A stretch of DNA of 64,000 nucleotides from Octopus bimaculoides. Its lineage: Eukaryota. Position numbers and translations under genes: made by a program. The stretch's first letter is position 1; each line of letters opens with the position of its first letter. Of the stretch, positions 7,000 through 54,000 are shown piece after piece. The notes under the pieces were generated by a model that saw nothing but the letters and a program-made list of their open reading frames with translations, searched no databases and was not told the origin of the DNA. The stretch spans positions 71,617,289 to 71,681,288 of the forward strand of contig NC_068990.1 of assembly GCF_001194135.2 (NCBI RefSeq), given 5' to 3'.

Positions 7000-9259
7000 T
7001 ATAACACAGCCTGTATGTAACAGGGAGACAACAGTGGATTAGAAAATATTTCACTCTGACTGTCTGACTGTTTGAAGTTTTCAAGTCATTTTACAAAACC
7101 AAGCCCCAACACATTTACCTATCTGTGCATGTATTTGTGCGCGCGCGCACACACATACATTTAATGCACTTACATAAGGAAATAGCAGAATCTTTTTAAA
7201 TAATTGGATACTTCAAAAGAAAAAGATGAAAACGAAACAAATTAATTGCTAACGATAAATTATTAGAATATCTGATTAGTTTTAAAAGTTAAAAAAAAAA
7301 AAAAAAAAAAAAAACCTTAAGCATTACTGTAAAACTGATTTAGGAAAAAAAATCTATTTTAATGTGTGTGACCTATTTGTTACTAAGCAACCAAATCTTG
7401 ACCTGCTAAGACACGCAGCAACAGTACGAGATGCGACGCTTTATTGTTGTCAGACTGCAAAAAAGTCTCAGTCCATGCTTTGTTCCGCCCACTATTATTT
7501 TCACTATTTATCTTTTGTGCCTGTCACGACCTATCTGTTTTTTTTTTGTTTTTTAACTATTAACTGATCTCGTAACCATGCCTGTATATAACTACTACTG
7601 TTAAAAGTTGGTGTCAAGGAGCCAACGTAGAAGCCTCTGCATGATCGCATGACCTGCTTAGCAATAGCAACCAAACCTACATACCCCTTCCCATTTAAGA
7701 AAGCCTTGGTTTATAGGTCCGCTCGATCAGGCCTGACTTTGGGTTAAAAATCAACAGCGTCTCTTCACGTAATTGGCTTAATGATAAAACACACACACAC
7801 ACATTGTCTGGATCTAACAGCGAGAATACGGAAAGACCCTGCCCGTCGTATAGTATAAATCAAACCCAGGTGAGGCTAATCCTCAGTCAGGTTTCTATTC
7901 CTTACAGGGTGGGTGGGGCCTCGCACCGAATCTAGAAATCGATCTTATATATTGACACAGCACAGCGTTGTAGAGCAAGACGAAAGTTCTACGTGACCCC
8001 GAGAAGCTCAGTTTCGATTCCTTAACAGGACTAATTTAGTTATCTCTACACGAATGCAGGCAACCAAATAAACCAATTCAACTAACGAAGGGGCGTTGCC
8101 GGGAAAGGTTTCATTACTCTAATTCCTTCCCTATCTGGGGGTGTTGTACAGGGAGTGTTCTCATTTGAAAATGGATTCTTATATTTGAAAGATTTTTGGA
8201 ATATATCTTAGCTACATCGAAGTGCTATTCAGTCCCACTACCCAAGACGGAAACTGAAAGAAGCCTTGTTCCCCTCTACAGCTCGATAACTGGTGTTGGT
8301 TTGTTTGCGTCCCTGTCACTATGCAGTTCGGCAAAAAAAAACAAAAAAACAAGAGGCCCATAGAATTAGTACCGGGTTTTTAAAAAAAATAAGTTCTGGG
8401 GTCCATTTTCGCTCGGCTAAACCCTTGAAGGCGGTACCCTAGCATGGCGACAATCTAATCACCAAAACAAGTTTAAAAAAAAGACACACTTATTGATATT
8501 GGAATTTATACATACATACAATATTGGTACCTGATTGATATAGTAAACCGAATTGGTTTNNNNNNNNNNNNNNNNNNNNNNNNNNNNNNNNNNNNNNNNN
8601 NNNNNNNNNNNNNNNNNNNNNNNNNNNNNNNNNNNNNNNNNNNNNNNNNNNNNNNNNNNNNNNNNNNNNNNNNNNNNNNNNNNNNNNNNNNNNNNNNNNN
8701 NNNNNNNNNNNNNNNNNNNNNNNNNNNNNNNNNNNNNNNNNNNNNNNNNNNNNNNNNNNNNNNNNNNNNNNNNNNNNNNNNNNNNNNNNNNNNNNNNNNN
8801 NNNNNNNNNNNNNNNNNNNNNNNNNNNNNNNNNNNNNNNNNNNNNNNNNNNNNNNNNNNNNNNNNNNNNNNNNNNNNNNNNNNNNNNNNNNNNNNNNNNN
8901 NNNNNNNNNNNNNNNNNNNNNNNNNNNNNNNNNNNNNNNNNNNNNNNNNNNNNNNNNNNNNNNNNNNNNNNNNNNNNNNNNNNNNNNNNNNNNNNNNNNN
9001 NNNNNNNNNNNNNNNNNNNNNNNNNNNNNNNNNNNNNNNNNNNNNNNNNNNNNNNNNNNNNNNNNNNNNNNNNNNNNNNNNNNNNNNNNNNNNNNNNNNN
9101 NNNNNNNNNNNNNNNNNNNNNNNNNTCTCTCTCTCTCTCTCTCTTTGAAGGATAATTAATAGAAAATCTAGAGATATCGGGAAATGCTTTCCTTAAATAT
9201 TAGACCTGTTAATTAGAGGTTGGAAAATTCTGTTTACTCAAAGAAAGATATTAAAAGGT

Positions 9260-11184: not shown

Positions 11185-11275
11185 CACACACACATGTACA
11201 CACATAAACATACATTCGTACACACACACATATATTATGTAGTATTAATTGTGAGGTAGTTTTAGTAATTCTTAC

Positions 11276-11494
11276 CACATTACGAAGGTGGGCAAACTCG
11301 GCGTCGGAACCGTTCTTGGAAGGCGACCTGCCTACAACAAGGTTGATAAAGACACCATCAACAATGTAAATACAGTCTTGATCGCCACTGCCGTATTTTT
11401 CTCTCAAAGCATCTGTAAAAGATTTCTTGTAAACATTGTTTTTCTCTGATTCCAAAGAAGCGATCTGACGTGATATTTCAACACAAGTTTCCAT
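11276..11494 (-). CDS. First coding exon of an unidentified gene divergent from Clc (METCVEISRQIASLESEKNNVYKKSFTDALREKYGSGDQDCIYIVDGVFINLVVGRSPSKNGSDAEFAHLRNV)
   Basis: 73 open codons of non-repetitive, protein-like composition. ATG context aagATGg and donor GTG|gtaaga (phase 0). The other two frames are closed. I do not recognise the family. Confidence 0.6.
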
Positions 11495-11930: not shown

Positions 11931-12078
11931 ATGGCTGATTTCGAGAATTTCGAGTCTGCTGGTGATGGAAATGTCGAAGAAGACCCTGCTGCTGACTTTT
12001 TAGCTCGTGAACAGACAGAACTCGCAGGTCTTGAAGACGACAACTTTCCCGTTGCAGATGCCTCTCAGCCAACTGCAG
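11931..12078 (+). CDS. Clc: Clathrin light chain, coding exon 1 (MADFENFESAGDGNVEEDPAADFLAREQTELAGLEDDNFPVADASQPTA-G)
   Basis: ATG in context aacaaaATGG. Contains the conserved CLC N-terminal motif EEDPAADFLAREQ-x-x-LAGLEDD. Ends at donor CAG|gtacgt, phase 1. Confidence 0.97.
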
Positions 12079-12621: not shown

Positions 12622-13287
12622 NNNNNNNNNNNNNNNNNNNNNNNNNNNNNNNNNNNNNNNNNNNNNNNNNNNNNNNNNNNNNNNNNNNNNNNNNNNNNNN
12701 NNNNNNNNNNNNNNNNNNNNNNNNNNNNNNNNNNNNNNNNNNNNNNNNNNNNNNNNNNNNNNNNNNNNNNNNNNNNNNNNNNATTAGTTATAATTTTTTC
12801 CCCCGGAAATTCCCTCTTCAGAGAACGATGTATTTATTCCTGATTAACATAACTCTTTCCATCGATTTTTACCAACTTTGCTAATATGAGTTAGCTTTCT
12901 TTAATTTTACTTCCTCGTTCAATGATGTGTGCCGCCTCGTCACTTCCTGATGTGTGCTTGTGTATAAAGCTAATTTACAACTAGATAAAATACAAAAAAG
13001 AAAAAAGATCATGCGAGCACAATCATCTCCACCATTATCTTCAAGAGCAAGGAAGTCGAGTTAAAAAAAAGATGCGAGTTGTTAAAGCTGAAGCTGGTTC
13101 AAATGATACAAAATTACCCTTTCTCTTTTAAGTGTGGCACGTTCCTACAATTTTGGTAGGTAATTAATTAGATAACAATTTTTTTTTTCTCGTCGAATTT
13201 CTCCTTATCAGACTTCTGATGGGACCTGTACATTAGTCTCTAACTCCTTGAACTTTTTACTGACCACACACACATGTATATATATAG

Positions 13288-13338
13288 GTCTTGAAGATGA
13301 CAACCCCCCCGTTGAAGATGTTACTCTTCCAACCACAG
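13288..13338 (+). other. Candidate duplicated 51-nt exon (G-LEDDNPPVEDVTLPTT-G) inside a diverged copy of the exon 1/intron 1 junction
   Basis: 39/51 identical to 12028-12078 with no indels. Retains donor CAG|gtacgt and is preceded by TACTGAC and tatatag. Phase 1-1. The polypyrimidine tract is poor. Confidence 0.45.
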
Positions 13339-18634: not shown

Positions 18635-18705
18635 CTGATGGGTTTAACACCTTTGAAGAATCAAATGCAACAGTTAATGGTTTGAGTGATGCAGATGTGC
18701 CACAG
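18635..18705 (+). CDS. Clc: Clathrin light chain, coding exon 2 (ADGFNTFEESNATVNGLSDADVPQ)
   Basis: Acceptor ttctattgtag and donor CAG|gtatgc. 71 nt, converting phase 1 to phase 0 exactly as exons 1 and 3 require. Low-conservation acidic linker. Confidence 0.85.
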
Positions 18706-20198: not shown

Positions 20199-20319
20199 AC
20201 TAATGGACCTACAGATGGAAGTGGTTATGCTGCTATAGCTCAAGTTGATAAACACCATCGAGAACCTGAGAAAATCAAGTTGTGGAGAGAAGAACAAAAG
20301 AAACGGCTTGAACACAAGG
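20199..20319 (+). CDS. Clc: Clathrin light chain, coding exon 3 (TNGPTDGSGYAAIAQVDKHHREPEKIKLWREEQKKRLEHK)
   Basis: Acceptor cttgcttgcag and donor AAGG|gttagg. Matches the CLC NGPTD..YAAI.QVD...EPE.I..WREEQ..RLE motif. 121 nt, phase 0 to 1. Confidence 0.96.
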
Positions 20320-22977: not shown

Positions 22978-23089
22978 ATGCTGAAGAAGAAAATAAGAAG
23001 GAAATATGGCGTGAAGCTGCAAAGAAAGAGCTTGAAGATTGGTTGAAAAATCAGGCAGAACAGCTTATTAAGACCAAAGAAAACAACCG
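22978..23089 (+). CDS. Clc: Clathrin light chain, coding exon 4 (DAEEENKKEIWREAAKKELEDWLKNQAEQLIKTKENNR)
   Basis: Acceptor gattgtag and donor CCG|gtaata. Heavy-chain-binding helix with W..AKKELEDW...Q.EQL.K.K.NNR. 112 nt, phase 1 to 2. Confidence 0.97.
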
Positions 23090-25380
23090 GTAATACTACT
23101 GTTTTAGTTATAAATCTTCATCTATCAATAAATGTTTTTCTCTTTCACTTAAATCAGGTATACAGTTATTGAGATTTTAGTGTTCTTGTCTGATACAAAA
23201 AGAATACTCTCAACATTTTATTTACTAAGCACTTGCCTACCGTTGCATTGATTGATATACATATTATTGTAGTGTTTAACTTGTCTGCTTTAGTAAGAAT
23301 TAAATCTTTCAGAAAGATCTGTAGATCTTTGGAGGCCAAATAAGTAAAATTTATATTATAATCAAATTTGAATTTTGATTGGCATTTTGTTCCTTGCTTA
23401 TATTTTTGTGTAATTCCTTTAAAAAAGATTAAAATCTTAAATTAGTAAAACTATTATAATCTGAAACACTGGTATGGAATGACCTAGAAATGTAAGTAGT
23501 AACATTGGTGATTGAATGAAAATACAGTGAAGTTAAAAAAAAAAAAAGACCTGGAATCAAAATTCTCATTCCTGCTTGGACATATTTATTCTGATGTCCT
23601 CCTGACAACAGTCTGTTCCACTTGTAGAAGCTGTAATACCGTCAATATTCTTGAATGAAAACATAGAATGGCTTCTCTAAAATTTTAACTTGGATATGTA
23701 AAATAATTGTATCTAGTGTTGTGTATTAGAACAAGGGCCAAATGTAAGAGTAATTTAATGCATTGTTGAAGCTTCTTTTTATATAGAGCCTGTTGTTTGA
23801 TGATGGGCATTCTTAAAGATGTTAAATACTTCTCTTCCTTACAGCACACTAACATTTTACTATTTTATTGAACTCATGCCAGTACAAACTTTACTAGTCT
23901 CTCTAGCCAATGAGGAAATATCTTCAGGAACGTTTGATCTACTTGAAATTGCAGCCAAATCTCCCTCAAATCATAGTCTTTATCACTTATTTAGGAGGGA
24001 AGGGCAGTACACATGACCCCTTTATAGGACCTCTGAGACTATTGAAGGGGAAGGACAGTATCCAAGGACCAGTTGGCAGTGTTAAACCAGATGACGGATT
24101 AAGTCTGCCACCCCAAACAGTAAATTTTTAAAATTGTGGCAGATTTAGTGACATTCTTTAGACTTCAACTTTATAACAGGTTTAGACATTTGAATAATTA
24201 TCACCATGAAGGAAAAACTACAGAAATAAAATTCTTGTTTGCCAATGATATATATATCTATTAATTTTCTAAGTTGTATTTATTTCCACTCAACACTGAA
24301 AGTAATATTCATTGTGCATGAAATCTTTTGTGAACAAAGTCAGTAATTTATTGTTCTTTGAAATCTTGTATTATTGTTCTATGCTATGTTTGCTCTTGTC
24401 CCCTATATTTTATTGACATTGTTCCCATCTGTATGGCACTTCCCTACCACGTGTATGGCACTACTGTTCCAACTTTGCGCTAGTGTTATCTTTCAGTATA
24501 TAAATATGCACTTTTATCTTGTTGATGCTGTATAATTAATGCTTTCTTATTTAAGTGCTGTAATATTTGCTTCTTGGTAAGAAAAAGAAAAAAAGTCTTG
24601 TTAGTAATTAAGGACAATAGCCAATAACATATTTAGCATTTAAGGAGTTCAACTGGTAAGTTCTGCTGTGTTAACTCCTAATCTTTAATAGTTTAAATTT
24701 TTATCAACCCCAATCACGTCTGTTCATTCTGTTACTCAATTTGTTTGTTCTTGAAATTATATTCAAATATAGGATATATCTGGCAGTTGTGAAACTACTT
24801 CAACAGAAATTATACAGAATTATAATATACATATAGAATAGAATTAAAGAATTAAAATGTTTTGTTTTAAAAAAGCTTGTTGCACTATGTAAAAAGTTAC
24901 AATTTTGTTTGAAATTGTAATTTTAATAATTGAATTATTATTATAATAAAAACAAAATAATACTTTATTTGGCAGCTGTGCATTGTTAACCAGCTAGAGG
25001 AGATTCCTCTTGAGGTTAAAACATTGCAGTAAAGTCCATTTGAATGGAACAGCCATATTGAAGTGGCTATGAACATTAATTTTATATTATCTTTAGGTTT
25101 CACCTTTTTCCTTTTTAGATTTTTTTTTTTTTTTTTTTTAGAGATGACAGGTGATGCAATTTCATCCTGCTTTCAAGCCTCTTATTATCGTGACTTAAAT
25201 TGTCTCCCTCCATCATGAAACACTATGAACTTTGTGAACATTGTAGATCAGTAATTCCTCACCAAGCTATTTCCCCCTATGCTCCGGTAACATCTCTTTG
25301 AATATAAACATGTCAAACTGATTTCTTTATACGTCGTCTTTGGTGCACTTGTAAGTGTGTATCTCATTGTTCTTCCACAG

Positions 25381-25419
25381 AGCTGCTGCCGCAGCCGAGC
25401 TTGCAGACATCACTTGTGG
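25381..25419 (+). CDS. Clc: Putative alternative 39-nt cassette exon of clathrin light chain (R-AAAAAELADITC-G)
   Basis: Acceptor tctcattgttcttccacag and donor TGG|gtaaga. Symmetric phase 2-2 and open in frame. Local GC/CpG retention within a CpG-poor intron. Confidence 0.75.
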
Positions 25420-25596
25420 GTAAGACTAAAACTGTAGCGACGCACTCTAAGTAGACTTTAGACATTTGCTGTTGTTGTCATTGTTGTTGTCAGTTCGTCT
25501 GTAATCTTTATTTATCTTTAGTTCCACTGTAGAAATTTATTTTATTTTTAAAGGGATCATTTTATTTCTTTAGCATGACCATCATTCTGATTATAG

Positions 25597-29781: not shown

Positions 29782-29808
29782 GCATGCAGAGGCTTTGGAG
29801 AAAAAAAA
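29782..29808 (+). CDS. Clc: Putative alternative 27-nt microexon of clathrin light chain (HAEALEKK-K)
   Basis: Branch-like tactcac, a ~35-nt polypyrimidine tract ending ttcctctacag, and consensus donor AAA|gtaagt. Symmetric phase 2-2 and open in frame. Confidence 0.72.
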
Positions 29809-31548
29809 GTAAGTATTCAGTGTAGGTAATTTTGCAGTTTTATCATGCAGTATATACATATGCTGCAACTCTTTAGGGATAAATTTTTTTCTCATCTCTA
29901 TATTCTAATAAATTAATAATAAAAAAAAAATATTTTGAATTAGCCATAAAATTCTGTAATTTAAACATTTACTGCCACTATGGATTAGCTTTCTTTTCTG
30001 GATTGATTATTTTCTGTAGATGCTTTTAGTGTAAATACTGTTTAATATAGCTTTGCTTTTTAAGTCTCAGGAAAACAGTTATCCCAACTGTATGGGTTAT
30101 AAGTATCTCTTGATTTTGGTCATAAAATTTCCTATAAAGCCTAATACTGGACTTAATTGTTGTGATGGTTGTTGTTCAATTTAGCTTTTTCCCTTTGCTT
30201 TTCTTTAATAAAAAAAAATCAGTTTCCAACATTTGCATNNNNNNNNNNNNNNNNNNNNNNNNNNNNNNNNNNNNNNNNNNNNNNNNNNNNNNNNNNNNNN
30301 NNNNNNNNNNNNNNNNNNNNNNNNNNNNNNNNNNNNNNNNNNNNNNNNNNTTAATGTTTGGGTTTTTTTCAACAATTATTTTCATTGAATTATTTTAAAT
30401 TTTAAAAGATTTTCATTTATCAAAATGTTTGACTTTACATTTGTACCAGTTTTAAAGTAATTATTAAATGTGTAAATCTTATGACAATATATAATCAAAA
30501 TGTAATTCTTTCTCTCTGGGTTGATTCCAAATGACAGAGCAGAAAGGCATCTCCAAAGTGAGACTATATCACTGTCTACTATGAACATATATACACCATG
30601 CTTGAGTGAATGTTGAATATTTAATACACATGACTACCTTTAGTAGAAATTTTGTTGTAGTGGGACACACCTACATATTTCAGATAAACTTATTAACCTA
30701 CACTAAGTCAACATTGATATCTTACATGAAACATCATCATTTACTGTTTGTTGATAGTTGTCACTGCCTATCCATATGAAATATCACAAACCTCTGCTGG
30801 CTTCTGTCCTCAGTTGCTGTCGTTATTGCTATCAAATCTTCTCGTATTATGTATCTTGGTCAAGGTTTACCCTGATTTCTTCCACTTATACAGTATTTGT
30901 CTTGGCAACTGAGTTACCTCCATTCTTTGGACCTACCTAAAATTATAGAGGTCTCATTGCACCAATATCTCTCTTCCTTATAAGGAATTTGGTTTTCTTT
31001 AGGATGAGCCTTTTCATGTGATGTTCATATTTTTGTGTTGGGCGTCTCATCATGAATGCATGCTGTTTATTTTATCTTTGTAGTATATTGTCCATGCCTA
31101 TGATCTGTAGAATAAGGTGGATAATACTACTGCTATGTGTACTTCACATTTAACTTGGACTGATACATACTTGTAGTTCTTCTCTCTTTCTCAGTCCCCT
31201 GAATTCTGAGCTAACTTTGTTCAACCCGCAATCTAGTTTGACATTGAGTCTATCAGCATTTCTCATAATACTACCGAGAGAGGTAAAATATCTTGCCTCC
31301 ACCAGCTCTGACCTTTTAATAATGTTGGAATCTGGTTGTGCTTCTTGGTTAAAGTTGGAATTTAATTAATAAAAAACTTCAATATTCTGGATGTTAATTT
31401 TCAAGCTGACCTCTGTGGTTGCACCGTCAAAAACCCCCATATTCTGCTTATTCTTTCACACTATGGACGACAAAACATGATCATCAAACATTTTTCTTAC
31501 TAATATGTGTGTTACTGATATGTAGAGCTTTGAGATCTAACACCTTAA

Positions 31549-31689: not shown

Positions 31690-34051
31690 TTAAACTGGTT
31701 ATCATCAGGTCTTGTCTCTGGAATACCTCCTCGAGCATTGTTGACAAGCAAGATGAGAATAATGTTGATACTAGCATGCTGCCCTGCTTGTCTCCCAGTT
31801 CATCTGTGTAATTTGGGTTGTCTTCTTGGCAAGTAGGGATTTTACAGATGAGTGAAACTTCTAGCATCCAAACCTGAGTATTTGCTACAGGCTCAACTGG
31901 TTTACACTTGAACTCCTTTGTGAAGTTAAGATCACATAGTGTGTTCTGTTCCACACATTTCTTAATCTAAGGCTGAACATCATAAACATAGTGCTACTTC
32001 TCCCTTCTGAACTCGCATTGAGTTTTAAGTAGAACATTAGTGCCTTTTCTCATACAGTCTACTGCTCAATACTTTTGTGTGTGTAAAATCATTTAATGTT
32101 TGTTTTCCATGCTGGAGTGTGTGTGTGTGTGTGTGTTGCTCTTGTCTTGACATATTAAACAAATGTCACCATTATACATACAGAACTATTTGTTTGTAAT
32201 CCTTTGTGGAAGCATGTTAGGCCATTGATCTGTTCATTGTTTGAAGGAAAATGGGGAAGGTTGGTGACTGAAAGAGTATCTGGCCATACAAAATTTTGCC
32301 TCAATAACTTTTGTCTGGCCTATGCAAATATGGGAAAGTGCATGTTGAAACTATGTAAATATCAAAATATCTCTCAACATGGTTGAGTAATGTAAATCCT
32401 GCTATTGTGGAAAAAATTAATGTAAAGATGAAACAAAAACATGTATAAAATGATCCATAATGTTTAATGATGAGATAAATGTTAAGGCTTAATATTTATC
32501 ATAAATGATTTAAAGAATATTCTATCAAGTAATTAGTTTATGGTACAATGTCTATCAGTGTTCTTGTTCTTCACTGCTCTTTTTCTGTCTCAAATTTATC
32601 CTTATGAATATCTAATATAATAGACATTCATAAGATTAAATTGAAAATTCATTATAATATCTAATACTGTATTTTAGTAGTCGGAAATTCATTGATATTA
32701 AAACACTATGAAGAAAAAAACCTTTATTAAATATTTATAAAAGTAAATTTCCCTCAATATAAAATATTCCTATTGTCTGGTAGTTGTAGCTTCCTCTCTG
32801 CTATATTGAAATGTACTAATTATTATTAACCCAGTTATTTTGTTAACCTAATTATTAATGACTTCTACTTGAGTATTTCTTCATATTTGTCAATTTGCCA
32901 AATATTTTCACTAAAATTGTTCCTAGTGCTAAGAAAGAAAAATGTTTCGCTTTTATTGTGGCTGCTTTATTATTTTATTACTGTTTTTTTTTTTTCATGT
33001 TTATTATTTTTATTATTCATTACCTTCTCAAATAAAGTTTCGCTTGTTTTCACTGAAATCTTGCTAGATTTTACATTATTCTTTGTTGGTAAGGTACCTC
33101 AACTCTTTAATAAGTATATTAAACTGAGGTAGCAATCTGGTTTCAATTCCTGATGGAAAACATTTTTTTTATTACTACGAATAGCCTTCAGAAAGGCATG
33201 AACGTCACAATCTTTTTTCTCTTTCTTTAAATGGTGGTCTTGTACCTCCATACTATATAAATATGCTTGTGAAAATTTTGGAAATACTTTAATTACTGAA
33301 CTGTCAGATGTATATTGATTAGTGTAAATGTAACTTATATCATGAATATGCTATCATTTGAGTGATAACTAATTTCTGATAAATTTGATTCGTACGATTT
33401 AATTAATTTAAGCAATATTGTCTCTCTAATTACATATGAAGTAATACTAGTTTATGCTAATAATTGTAAGTATTTTAACAAAGTTAGCTTGAATAAGTCC
33501 TATTTCTCTTAGGTCCTTGGTATTCCATTTAATTTTCTTTTAACTTTCATTTTAAAATTATACTCATGTTTTCCATTAATTTATAAAAGTCTAATTAGTG
33601 AAGCAATGTATAAAATTGTACTGTTTGTATAATTATTTGCCAAAAAATGTAGACAGATTTATACTACTGTCTATTTCTGAAATAACATTTCGAATTGCTA
33701 ACATTTAAATTGAAGAAATAAACCTCATTTTGAAATTAGAGCTCCATAGTTATCTTAAGTGACTTCACTACTAGCTGTTACATGTTCAGGTGTGGTCATA
33801 TCTCAGTGTACCAGCAATTAATGAATTTATTAACTGATACAAAAACTTACATCGTCATATATGAACAAAATTTTAGATTTTTAATTACTGAGATATTATT
33901 AATACACACTTGCACTGGTTCAATGGATAGCACATTATCAAAGGAATGTGGAATATTTTTGTCTTTACCAGCAGTAAATATTGTACATATTTCTATTGTT
34001 TACCCTGCTTTGTATTATTGTATTGATTAAATCTTGCTTTCCCTTATGTAG

Positions 34052-34223
34052 GGCACAAGAAGAAGCAAGCATGAAGGACCGTGAAGAGAGCATTGCTGGT
34101 CAAGAATGGGAGAAAATCTGTCGGCTTTGTGACTTCAACCCTAAGCATTCCAAAAACACAAAAGACGTGTCTCGTATGAGATCAATATTGCTACAGTTGA
34201 AGCAAACGCCTCTGGTTCGCTGA
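34052..34223 (+). CDS. Clc: Clathrin light chain, terminal coding exon (AQEEASMKDREESIAGQEWEKICRLCDFNPKHSKNTKDVSRMRSILLQLKQTPLVR*)
   Basis: Acceptor ctttcccttatgtag, phase 2. Conserved CLC C-terminus EWE.I..LCDFNPK.SK..KDVSRMRS.L..LKQ.PL.R. TGA at 34221-34223. Confidence 0.98.
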
Positions 34224-34401
34224 AGATTGTAGCCTCATGAAATAGTTGTATGCTAATGAGAATGTTAAAGAAGAATCAGGATTTGTGAAACTATTGTTTT
34301 GGTTGTCATGGTTGAAATTTAAACTAGAAGCAATTACTAATTCCTTAAGAGTAATTGATCAAAAATCAATAGATTATGTTAACTGAATTTGTAGACTTGT
34401 C

Positions 34402-51021: not shown

Positions 51022-54000
51022 CTGCAATACAATCAGTGTTTCACTAATTAACATTTAAGAAATAATTTAGTATTTCTTTCTTACACTTGTACATAACAAA
51101 TATACCAATATGATGAGAAAAAAAGAAAAAAAAATGAAATTCATATATTATTTTTCCCTGCTGGTATGAAAACAATTAAGATTTAATGTATTCAATTATT
51201 AAGGCTGAAAATTTTTCAGATAAACTCATTGAGATGATATCTCTTATGAAATACACTTCAGCTATGTGTTTCAAGTAATTTTGAAAATAATTGAGAATTT
51301 GTAAAGATTTAGTAAAACTGTCTTTTCTTTATTATTGAGCTGATGTTTGTAAAATTACCTTAACAAAAGCAATTTCAATAAAATTACAATGGAAACATTT
51401 TTATTTAAATGTGAACAATTTAAAACAAAACCTTTTGTTTCATTGACTCAAGGGTGATCTCAAAATGGTTAAATGAAAATATAAAGAGAATACAACACTC
51501 CAGAAATCTCTATAGAAATTTTACTTTATTTAAAGCTGGCAGTAATTTTAAAGAAAGAGCCCGAATCAGCTTTTATTATTTATACTGATTTGTTAATCAG
51601 CAGTTTTTGCATTTAGTTCATTGCTCATTTATCTTTTATTTAAAGACCATTGATTGAAATGTTTAAGAAAATTTTATAAAATGTGAGAAAACAANNNNNN
51701 NNNNNNNNNNNNNNNNNNNNNNNNNNNNNNNNNNNNNNNNNNNNNNNNNNNNNNNNNNNNNNNNNNNNNNNNNNNNNNNNNNNNNNNNNNNNNNNNNNNN
51801 NNNNNNNNNNNNNNNNNNNNNNNNNNNNNNNNNNNNNNNNNNNNNNNNNNNNNNNNNNNNNNNNNNNNNNNNNNNNNNNNNNNNNNNNNNNGTGTATACT
51901 CTTTTACTCTTTTACTTAGTTTCAGTCATTCGACTCTGGCCATGCTGGGGCACCATTTTGAAGGGCGTAGAGGAACAAACCAAGCCCAGTTCTTATTTTT
52001 GAAGTCTGGTACATTTTCTATTAGTCTGTTTTGTGGACCTGCTAAGTTATGGGGGTGTAAACAAACCAATACTGGCTGTCAAGCAGCGGAGGAGGGGGGG
52101 ACATGAAGACACACACACATACACACGTGTGTGCAACAGGCTTCTGCATATTTTTCATCAACAAAAGTTCCTCATAAGGCATTAGTTGGCCTGGGGCTAT
52201 ATTAGAAGACACTTCTCCCAAGGTATCACATAGTAGGACTGAACACAAAACCATGTGATAGCCATGTTCACAACATATATACACACACATACATACATAA
52301 ACAAAATAGTTCATACATATGTACAAGATTTATCCTCCATCACACACGTCCACAAGCGCACAGGTACATACCTATATAGACAGACCCATGCACATGCACA
52401 CACATATACACACACAGAATCAGATTTAAATAATTATAATAATGCTTTATATTCATCAAGTGTCACAAATATTAAAGAATATTTAGAGTTACTTTCCCAA
52501 ACGGATGTATAATCACAGAAGTTAACTAATGTTTCTGCACAAGAAAGACACACGACTGACTGCCTCAGTCTATGAGGCTAGAACCAGGATCCACTTCTTA
52601 ACAGTAAAAGAGGTTTGCAGTAGAAGGAACATCCAAAAGTAACAAACAACTAGCACTCCATTGGTTATGATGATGAGAGTTCCAATTGATCTGATCAACA
52701 GAGCAGTCTGCTTGTAAAATTAATGAGCAAGTGGCTGAGCACTCCACAGACACGTGTACCCTTAATGTAGTTCTTAATGAGAGAGAGAGAGAGAGAGCTA
52801 ACATAGAGTCACTCCATTTACTAAAAACAGCAGCTAAATTTATTTCATATCATAAATGGATCTCCAACAGTTTTGATGATGAGCACTCAGTTATTTGAGC
52901 ACCTGAACTTCCTGCTCAGTGAATTACCTTTTAGGTAGCTTAGTATTCTCCAAAAGTGTGTACCATTAATGTAATTTTCAAACAGAACCAGCATGAGACA
53001 AGGCTGGACTTTTGAATCACTGGTACAATCTACCTGACAGGCTTCTGCACAGCTTTCATTTATGCACACAGCTTACAGGTCAAGGTGAGGAACCTATGGT
53101 AAATGACACAAGCAAAAATGCCATGCAGTGACATCAGACTAATGACTTCATGATTGAGAAGTGAACTTTTTAACTAGCCATGCCAGGTCCATACTTTATC
53201 ATCTTACAAAACAATATGTTGGATAGTGTAGTCCTAGATATTCTATATCTGAAAAGACAGGTTGGTCATAATTGGCATACCTTTTATCATAGGAGTGATC
53301 TTGCAGCTGAACAAAACAACAGGAGTGTAGAAATATATTGGACAGTGAAGAAAACATAACATGTCAACCACAGAAGACTGCAGTTCAGTGAATGTCAGAA
53401 TGTACATCAACTAAGAGCTGACATAATATATTTGGATCTATGGATTGAAGATCATCCTATTGTATTTTCCAGTATCTAACTCAAAGTGTATAGTGTAAAC
53501 ATGTAGTATAAACATTCAAACATCTTTGCAAATCCAGCTGCATTTTACATGGAACTTTTGGTCCTCCAAAGTCATCTTGGTGTGTAAGCCAACCTATCTT
53601 TTTTTTTTTTTTTTTTTTTTTTTGTAAATTTTGGTCTGAACAATTCGAGTTGTATGCAACATAATATGATAGTTATTTGATTGGATATCTATGTGGCATA
53701 GATCTCCTTGATCAGAGGTTACACAACTAGTAACATCAACAAAAGAATATCTATGCAGTCCTCAGCCTAAAAGAAATAATCAGAATAACCAATCTTAAGA
53801 AAAGAATATTTGTCAGTATAGTCTTGGCTACCACACTATCTGAGGAGAGGACTGGATGGTCAGGGCTGAAACATCTTTGATCAAAGATCAGCTCAATCAG
53901 AGCTGAATTGGTGCTAAATAACAACACAAAAACATCAGTAACATCAACAAAGATAACTTTACTACAACACCTATGACAACAATAATAACAATGAGGCATG

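What the first reader, a model, noticed from the sequence alone, without database searches (positions are those of the whole stretch)
25381..25419. 39-nt alanine-rich cassette exon within a CpG-retaining patch
Seen: acceptor cattgttcttccacag and donor GG|gtaaga enclose an exon encoding AAAAAELADITC. The exon and about 100 nt of flanks keep several CpGs (acgtcg, gccgcagccg, gcgacgc), although the surrounding intron is CpG-poor. Inference: this suggests purifying selection. An Ala-rich start could extend the CLC helix, and the insert adds a Cys.
Basis: partly seen in the sequence, partly recalled or inferred. Interest (0 to 1): 0.75.

Follow-up and report, generated by a model that had tools for sequence, protein, structure and literature searches.

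The report
Octopus clathrin light-chain cassette exon
The 39-base stretch is a real, optional exon of the octopus clathrin light chain gene that adds 13 amino acids at the spot where vertebrate neurons also add extra exons; it is strongly conserved in cephalopods but is already in the public gene annotation.

Summary
The window is Octopus bimaculoides DNA carrying the single clathrin light chain (CLC) gene on the + strand. It has an AG acceptor behind a pyrimidine tract and a GG|GTAAGA donor. It is 39 nt and keeps the frame: CG|A preserves the Arg, then AAAAAELADITC, then GG|G gives Gly.

- **Expression:** a spliced RNA-seq contig joins 23089|25381-25419|34052.
- **Annotation:** joining the window's exons reproduces RefSeq isoforms X1-X4 exactly, and X1 and X4 contain this exon. 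It is therefore already annotated.
- **Conservation:** the peptide is identical in Argonauta (38/39 nt). In a cuttlefish it is 35/39 nt, with three synonymous changes and one Asp-to-Glu change. That is higher than the constitutive exons (78-81%). About 45 nt upstream (octopods) and more than 100 nt downstream of intron are also conserved.
- **CpG patch:** it is the densest in the 11-kb intron, but individual CpGs turn over between species.
- **Structure:** AlphaFold2 models the insert as a seamless 13-residue extension of the central helix (81 vs 68 residues).
- **Position:** the exon sits in the same phase-2 intron as the vertebrate neuronal CLC inserts, but shows no significant sequence similarity to them. 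A second cassette (27 nt, 29782-29808) lies beside it.

Tissue specificity and function could not be tested. Interest is low to moderate.

The parts
25381..25419 (+). Cassette exon A, 39 nt. It enters after 2 nt of the Arg codon and leaves after 2 nt of a Gly codon. It encodes (R)AAAAAELADITC(G).
   Evidence: Sequence. Spliced cDNA contig L001. RefSeq isoforms X1 and X4 reproduced exactly. 38/39 nt identical in Argonauta and 35/39 in cuttlefish.
25338..25380 (+). Upstream flank: pyrimidine tract and AG acceptor (25362-25380), plus an octopod-conserved block TTTGGTGCACTTGTAAG (about 25338-25355). That block contains a 5'-splice-site-like GTAAGT and probably the branch-point region.
   Evidence: Alignments A1 and A2. 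The tract and AG are conserved to cuttlefish; the GGTGCACTTGTAAG block only in Octopus and Argonauta.
25420..25590 (+). Downstream conserved intron: donor GTAAGAC (25420-25426), GU-rich repeats TGCTGTTGTTGTCATTGTTGTTGT (25468-25491), and GCATG at 25573-25577.
   Evidence: 64-81% identity to Argonauta against about 33% intron background. BLAST E = 7e-51 over 323 nt. The donor and TTGTTGT repeats are conserved to cuttlefish; GCATG only in octopods. No stable RNA fold (z = 0.21) and no Rfam match.
22978..23089 (+). Upstream constitutive exon, ending ...KTKENN + CG (Arg codon split 2|1).
29782..29808 (+). Cassette exon B, 27 nt, encoding HAEALEKK(K), in the same intron and the same phase.
   Evidence: The RefSeq O. 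bimaculoides X2 model contains it. It is 27 nt and starts with His in Argonauta (HAEASDEK, read from the genome) and in cuttlefish (HSSEMGSD).
34052..34223 (+). Last coding exon, starting G GCA CAA (completes Arg or Gly, then AQEEAS...), with the stop codon at 34221-34223.
11931..12078 (+). First coding exon of the clathrin light chain gene (ATG at 11931). The other exons are 13288-13338 (a 51-nt N-terminal cassette), 18635-18705 and 20199-20319.

Best explanation
The feature is a genuine, frame-preserving, alternatively spliced cassette exon of the single clathrin light chain (CLC) gene of Octopus bimaculoides.

**Shown**
- It is spliced between the exon ending ...KENN-R (23089) and the last exon (34052).
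- It is included in some transcripts and skipped in others.
- It inserts 13 residues (AAAAAELADITCG) without disturbing the flanking residues.
- It has been kept at 39 nt, with the same splice sites and an almost unchanged peptide, in octopods and a cuttlefish.
- It is more conserved than the constitutive exons, and it is embedded in conserved intron sequence.
- It lies in the same phase-2 intron, at the homologous Arg codon, as the vertebrate neuron-specific CLC exons. It has a neighbouring second cassette (27 nt), so the two cassettes allow four forms of this region.

**Predicted**
- The insert is alpha-helical and continuous with the long heavy-chain-binding helix, lengthening it by 13 residues. 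At 1.5 A per residue that is roughly 20 A.
- This displaces and rotates the C-terminal segment that docks near the heavy-chain trimerisation domain. It also adds a third Cys.

**Inferred**
- Inclusion is controlled by RNA-binding proteins that recognise the conserved flanks. Candidates are CELF/Bruno-type proteins for the UGUUGU repeats and Rbfox for GCAUG.
- By analogy with the vertebrate neuronal inserts at this position, the insert tunes how the light chain influences clathrin lattice geometry in particular tissues, most plausibly the nervous system.
For: - **Gene identity:** tblastn with CLTA/CLTB. Best database hits are octopus CLC carrying PF01086. PDB CLCb matches at E = 3.7e-52.
- **Species and gene model:** the window's exons translate exactly to XP_014774089.1 (X1), XP_014774092.1 (X2), XP_014774093.1 (X3) and XP_014774094.1 (X4).
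- **Inclusion:** Logan RNA-seq contig SRR16213286_138215 aligns as blocks ...22977-23089 | 25377-25420 | 34047-34399, with the exon 100% identical. O. sinensis and O. vulgaris models also contain it.
- **Conservation:** Argonauta L002 10761-10796 has an identical peptide. Cuttlefish L005 around 51684-51722 encodes AAAAAELAEITCG with AG and GTAAGAC kept. Cassette A is 97.4% and 89.7% identical to Argonauta and cuttlefish; the constitutive exons are 89-93% and 78-81%. The flanks stand out from the intron background.
- **Structure:** helix 110-190 with the insert (pLDDT 96 and 90 across it) versus 97-164 without.
- **Same intron and phase:** electric eel CLTB has AAC AAC AG|gt, then a 54-nt exon, then ag|A GCG. 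Acorn worm and abalone split the same codon.
- **Vertebrate function of inserts at this site:** PMC7519287 and PMC8712872.
Against: - No expression data by tissue were available, so neural or other specificity is not shown.
- Only one assembled transcript contig was inspected directly. The RefSeq models are automated predictions.
- The exon is not in the deposited cuttlefish or Argonauta gene models, and no decapodiform protein containing it turned up. Use outside Octopus therefore rests on sequence conservation alone.
- The AlphaFold2 models are of the isolated chain, with overall pLDDT of about 69 and pTM of about 0.3. Helicity of an Ala-rich segment is an easy prediction.
- The named regulators are motif-level guesses.
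Confidence: 0.85

Rival explanations
1. The octopus exon is a diverged orthologue of the vertebrate 18-residue neuronal CLC exon. On this view, a cassette at this intron was already present in the bilaterian ancestor.
For: The intron position and phase are identical in octopus, fish, acorn worm and abalone. phmmer aligns AAAAAEL----ADIT-CG with IADKAFYQQPDADIIGYV, with A, A and ADI identical. Many lophotrochozoans carry short inserts at the same junction.
Against: A shuffle test gives p = 0.5-0.9 for octopus or cuttlefish insert A against three vertebrate inserts. Inserts in other phyla differ in length and sequence from each other and from A. No A-like or vertebrate-like candidate exon exists in the abalone or acorn worm intron.
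Confidence: 0.08
2. The conserved patch is mainly a non-coding element, such as an intronic enhancer, an RNA-editing complementary sequence or a small RNA. The exon would then be incidental.
For: Conservation extends well into the intron, to about 170 nt downstream in octopods. The exon is more conserved at synonymous sites than the constitutive exons.
Against: The substitutions that do occur are three synonymous and one conservative. Length, frame and both splice sites are kept. The exon is present in spliced cDNA. There is no stable fold (z = 0.21), no Rfam match and no meaningful ORF on the other strand. Conserved flanks are what is expected of a regulated alternative exon.
Confidence: 0.04
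3. The exon is splicing noise or an artefact of automated annotation, with no function.
For: The RefSeq models are computational. Only one transcript contig was inspected here.
Against: The peptide and splice sites are preserved from octopus to cuttlefish, with higher identity than constitutive exons. It is modelled independently in three Octopus species.
Confidence: 0.02

Closest known systems
Vertebrate neuron-specific clathrin light chain inserts: CLTB exon 5 (18 residues), CLTA exons 5 and 6 (18 + 12 residues)
   Same: Both are cassette exons in the same intron, entered after 2 nt of the Arg codon that follows the heavy-chain-binding helix and left after 2 nt of a codon. Both preserve the frame. 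CLTA likewise has two adjacent cassettes that can be used in combination. One of the cassettes adds a Cys (PMC8712872).
   Different: The lengths differ (39 + 27 nt versus 54 + 36 nt). There is no significant sequence similarity. Octopus has one CLC gene rather than two. Neuronal specificity and the effect on the lattice are demonstrated for vertebrates (PMC7519287) but untested here.
RefSeq and GenBank gene models of octopus clathrin light chain (O. bimaculoides XP_014774089.1 and XP_014774094.1; O. sinensis XP_036361865.1, XP_029641093.1, XP_036361866.1, XP_036361867.1; O. vulgaris CAI9729136.1, CAI9729138.1, CAI9729141.1, CAI9729143.1)
   Same: They contain exactly this exon, and the window's exons reproduce the O. 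bimaculoides proteins residue for residue.
   Different: No difference. These are the same feature. They are automated or deposited predictions, and no functional study was found.
Short inserts at the same junction in other lophotrochozoans (Lineus VNQAEFFKERE, Physella KHNDVTESQG, Littorina YSSSSLT, bivalve RGNM/RDNM/KHNM)
   Same: They are at the same R|A junction of the protein alignment and are present in only some predicted isoforms.
   Different: Their sequences and lengths are unrelated. None resembles cassette A. If anything, they resemble cassette B in starting with His or Lys-His.

Membership tests
Clathrin light chain (Pfam PF01086) | Sequence match to the family model over the whole protein | tested here: met
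   All top hits, including the proteins encoded by the window, carry precomputed PF01086. phmmer to PDB CLCb chains 6wcj_B and 6sct_D gives E = 3.7e-52 and 1.3e-51 over residues 4-220.
Clathrin light chain (Pfam PF01086) | N-terminal consensus sequence (EEDPAA.FLA..Q.E.AGIE.D) and a long central helix | tested here: met
   EEDPAADFLAREQTELAGLEDD is encoded in exon 1. AlphaFold2 gives a central helix of 68 or 81 residues with pLDDT >90.
Alternatively spliced cassette exon | Both junctions present in spliced RNA, and skipped transcripts also exist | tested here: met
   cDNA contig L001 includes the exon. Isoforms X2 and X3 lack it, and the Logan contig itself skips the 51-nt N-terminal cassette and cassette B.
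Alternatively spliced cassette exon | Frame-preserving length with no stop codon | tested here: met
   39 nt; the translation is checked against the RefSeq proteins.
Alternatively spliced cassette exon | Conservation of the exon and of flanking intron (the mark of regulated exons) | tested here: met
Alternatively spliced cassette exon | Tissue- or stage-dependent inclusion | not testable with these tools
   No read-level or tissue metadata were available. The one run, SRR16213286, could not be traced to a paper.
Vertebrate-type neuronal CLC insert | Same intron and same codon phase | tested here: met
   Electric eel CLTB locus L006: AAC AAC AG|gt ... ag|G ATT ... TTT GT|gt ... ag|A GCG, compared with octopus CG|gt ... 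ag|A GCT ... TGT GG|gt ... ag|G GCA.
Vertebrate-type neuronal CLC insert | Recognisable sequence homology of the inserted peptide | tested here: not met
   Semi-global BLOSUM62 scores of 0-7, with shuffle p = 0.5-1.0.
Vertebrate-type neuronal CLC insert | Neuron-specific inclusion and an effect on clathrin lattice curvature | not testable with these tools
   This needs tissue RNA and biochemical reconstitution.
Neural microexon programme (my recollection, not checked against a paper: exons of 3-27 nt with a UGC motif close to the acceptor) | Length <=27 nt and a UGC within about 30 nt upstream of the AG | tested here: not met
   Cassette A is 39 nt. The last 30 nt before the AG (gtaagtgtgtatctcattgttcttccacag) contain no TGC, and the nearest is in GGTGCAC at about -36. 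Cassette B is 27 nt, but no TGC is seen in its tract.

The most novel reading that the evidence does not exclude
Coleoid cephalopods independently evolved a two-cassette module (39 + 27 nt) in the same ancestral phase-2 intron of the clathrin light chain gene that vertebrates use for their neuron-specific inserts (54 + 36 nt). They would use it in the same way, to tune clathrin lattice properties for synaptic vesicle recycling. That would be convergent evolution of a nervous-system splicing switch in the two lineages with large brains. Cassette A's conservation above that of constitutive exons would then reflect overlapping protein and splicing-code constraints.
Probability: 0.3. Interest if true: 0.5.

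Novelty: already known. Interest (0 to 1): 0.25.

Why it matters
In vertebrates, light-chain splice variants change clathrin lattice curvature and synaptic vesicle replenishment. The reviews consulted describe such splicing for vertebrates only (PMC8712872, PMC7519287). A strongly conserved pair of cassettes at the same codon in cephalopods suggests this junction is a general tuning point of the clathrin coat. It would offer an independent natural experiment for what an insert there does. As a genome-scan result, however, it is a correct re-discovery of an exon that automated annotation already contains.

Tried and rejected
- **Fish origin:** I first assumed a fish or other vertebrate origin from the AT-rich, repeat-rich DNA. 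This was rejected once the protein search returned octopus proteins at 93-100% identity.
- **Deep homology with the vertebrate 18-residue insert:** the phmmer alignment looked suggestive, but the shuffle test showed nothing above chance. No related candidate exon exists in the abalone or acorn worm introns.
- **RNA structure:** a conserved structure or editing-type duplex around the exon was rejected. The fold is no better than shuffles (z = 0.21) and there is no Rfam hit.
- **Opposite-strand gene:** only chance ORFs of 33-51 aa are present.
- **Second protein search:** a short junction-centred cuttlefish-type query, meant to find squid or cuttlefish transcripts with the exon, returned only 8 unrelated partial hits.
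- **Contig look-ups:** several isoforms are not on record because only the longest product per gene is indexed.
- **Mismatch script:** the script was mis-registered and its output should be ignored. The junction evidence rests.
- **Literature:** Wakeham et al. 2005 could not be read. SRR16213286 is not mentioned in any held paper.
- **Long ORFs:** those at 44.5-45.8 kb and 49.5-50.3 kb are artefacts of N runs.

Full report
**What the window is.** tblastn with human CLTA and CLTB (sequences recalled from memory, used only as probes) found a clathrin light chain gene on the + strand. A search of the joined exons against the protein collection returned octopus proteins, not vertebrate ones. All exons in the window are 100% identical to Octopus bimaculoides 'clathrin light chain B' isoforms.

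The exon table, in window coordinates, is:

| Exon | Coordinates | Length |
|---|---|---|
| First coding exon (CDS part) | 11931-12078 | 148 nt |
| N-terminal cassette | 13288-13338 | 51 nt |
| Exon 3 | 18635-18705 | 71 nt |
| Exon 4 | 20199-20319 | 121 nt |
| Exon 5 | 22978-23089 | 112 nt |
| Cassette A (the finding) | 25381-25419 | 39 nt |
| Cassette B | 29782-29808 | 27 nt |
| Last coding exon | 34052-34223 | 172 nt |

Joining these exons in four combinations gives exactly XP_014774089.1 (X1), XP_014774092.1 (X2), XP_014774093.1 (X3) and XP_014774094.1 (X4). X1 and X4 contain the exon in question.

**Checking the observation.** The coordinates, acceptor (tctcattgttcttccacag|A) and donor (GG|gtaaga) are as written.
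- The upstream exon ends with the first two bases of an Arg codon (CG). The cassette supplies A, then AAAAAELADITC, then GG. The last exon supplies G. The insert is therefore 13 residues and neither flank changes.
- Among 430 frame-compatible AG...GT candidates in the 11-kb intron, three pass a strict splice-site filter. Two of them are the annotated cassettes.
- The CpG patch is real. There are 8 CpGs within exon +/-100 nt, with observed/expected 0.81 against 0.30 for the window. This is the unique maximum of the intron.

**Evidence that it is used.** A 962-nt contig assembled from the public run SRR16213286 is an intron-less cDNA about 99% identical to the window. It aligns as blocks ending at 23089, covering 25381-25419 without mismatch, and resuming at 34052. 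Gene models of O. sinensis and O. vulgaris contain the same 13 residues, alone or together with cassette B.

**Conservation.**
- I fetched the orthologous loci of O. vulgaris, O. sinensis, Argonauta hians and the cuttlefish Acanthosepion pharaonis.
- Against Argonauta, the intron aligns at about 33% (random level). The exception is 25287-25586, at 64-81%, with a smaller peak at cassette B.
- In Argonauta the exon differs at one synonymous site.
- In cuttlefish it is again 39 nt with AG and GTAAGAC. It encodes AAAAAELAEITCG, with three synonymous changes and Asp to Glu.
- Cassette A is more conserved than the constitutive exons: 97.4% versus 89-93% to Argonauta, and 89.7% versus 78-81% to cuttlefish.
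- The exon is not in the deposited Argonauta or cuttlefish gene models. I found no decapodiform protein containing it.
- The CpGs themselves are mostly not conserved. Each of the two exonic CpGs is lost in one lineage, and the upstream ACGTCG is absent in Argonauta. The patch is under constraint, but CpG retention is a weak proxy for that constraint. It partly reflects Ala-codon composition.

**Flanks.**
- Conserved to cuttlefish: the pyrimidine tract, both splice sites, and the GU-rich repeats (TTGTTGT...ATTGTTGT) 50-70 nt downstream of the donor.
- Conserved in octopods only: an upstream GGTGCACTTGTAAG block 25-40 nt before the acceptor, and a GCATG 154 nt downstream of the donor.
- The region has no stable predicted fold (z = 0.21), no Rfam match and no credible opposite-strand ORF.
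- I take the flanks to be binding sites for splicing regulators. Naming CELF-type or Rbfox proteins is an inference from motif resemblance only.

**Protein consequence.** AlphaFold2 was run with a 57-sequence alignment. It gives a single central helix of 81 residues with the insert (pLDDT about 96 and 90 across it) and 68 residues without it. The insert is thus predicted to extend the helix by exactly its own length. The models are of the free chain, and overall confidence is modest. The insert adds a Cys to the two in EKICRLCDF.

**Comparison with what is known.**
- In the protein alignment of 120 homologues, the R|A junction is where vertebrate CLCa and CLCb carry their neuronal inserts. Several lophotrochozoans also have short isoform-specific inserts there.
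- The electric eel CLTB locus shows the same split of the Arg codon and the same exit phase. Acorn worm and abalone split the same codon. The intron is therefore ancient.
- The octopus peptide has no significant similarity to the vertebrate inserts. The abalone and acorn worm introns hold no comparable exon. The cassette is thus a positional analogue rather than a demonstrable homologue.
- In vertebrates the inserts alter the light chain's influence on the heavy-chain knee, and with it lattice curvature and synaptic vesicle formation (PMC7519287). The 12-residue CLCa insert supplies a Cys that permits an internal disulfide in vitro (PMC8712872).
- No paper in the held library discusses octopus or invertebrate CLC splicing at this site.

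**Verdict.** The exon is real, functional by evolutionary criteria, and predicted to lengthen the CLC helix. It is also already present in the public annotation of this very species, so it is not a discovery. The new points from this work are:
- its conservation to cuttlefish, above that of constitutive exons;
- the conserved intronic elements;
- the parallel with the vertebrate two-cassette arrangement in the same intron.

Tissue specificity and biochemical effect remain untested.

Noticed in passing
window 29782-29808: A second cassette exon (27 nt, HAEALEKK+K) lies in the same intron and phase. If its donor is not used, the reading frame continues AAG TAA. This explains the truncated O. sinensis isoform X6, which ends ...HAEALEKKK. 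The length and the initial His are kept in Argonauta (HAEASDEK) and cuttlefish (HSSEMGSD), but the sequence drifts much more than cassette A.
   Followed up: partly
window 13288-13338; L003 and L004 about 3547 and 3880: A 51-nt N-terminal cassette (GLEDDNPPVEDVTLPTT) is a diverged copy (79%) of the end of exon 1. O. vulgaris and O. sinensis have two genomic copies 333 nt apart, and models use 0, 1 or 2. Argonauta has one and cuttlefish none. An assembly gap at 12622-12782 lies between exon 1 and the single copy in the window.
   Followed up: partly
window 11234-11494 (- strand): This is the first coding exon of a neighbouring gene. It is 95% identical to the start of the 620-aa protein called next to CLC in O. 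vulgaris, which carries faint or weak LRR Pfam hits. It lies head-to-head about 440 nt from the CLC start codon, in the CpG-richest part of the window. The same neighbour is called upstream of CLC in Argonauta, cuttlefish and abalone.
   Followed up: partly
window 25347-25356: A consensus-like 5' splice site (CTTGTAAGT) sits 25-30 nt upstream of the cassette's acceptor. It is conserved in Argonauta (GTAAGC) and resembles the exon's own 3' end plus donor (CACTTGTGGGTAAG). It could be a branch-point region or a decoy U1 site. This is unexplained.
   Followed up: no
L001 versus window exons: The RNA-seq contig differs from the window at about 1% of bases. The differences include His to Gln (RLEHK/RLEQK) and Ala to Thr (REAAKK/RETAKK). 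Thr matches O. vulgaris, O. sinensis and Argonauta; Gln matches Argonauta. The changes are C>A and G>A, so they are not A-to-I editing. The contig is probably from a different individual or a sister species. Its 5' end diverges upstream of 11922.
   Followed up: partly
window 8560-9125, 12622-12782, 30239-30350, 39790-39847, 41204-41841, 44655-45612, 49494-50236, 51695-51891: These runs of N are assembly gaps. They create spurious long ORFs in all frames (for example 44573-45769 and 49473-50273) and the very low G+C values in the composition profile.
   Followed up: yes
protein alignment of CLC homologues: Isoform-specific inserts at the same R|A junction occur in a nemertean (VNQAEFFKERE), gastropods (KHNDVTESQG, YSSSSLT), bivalves (RGNM, RDNM, KHNM) and some teleosts (LCPSLAR). 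This intron looks like a recurrent site for lineage-specific micro-cassettes.
   Followed up: partly
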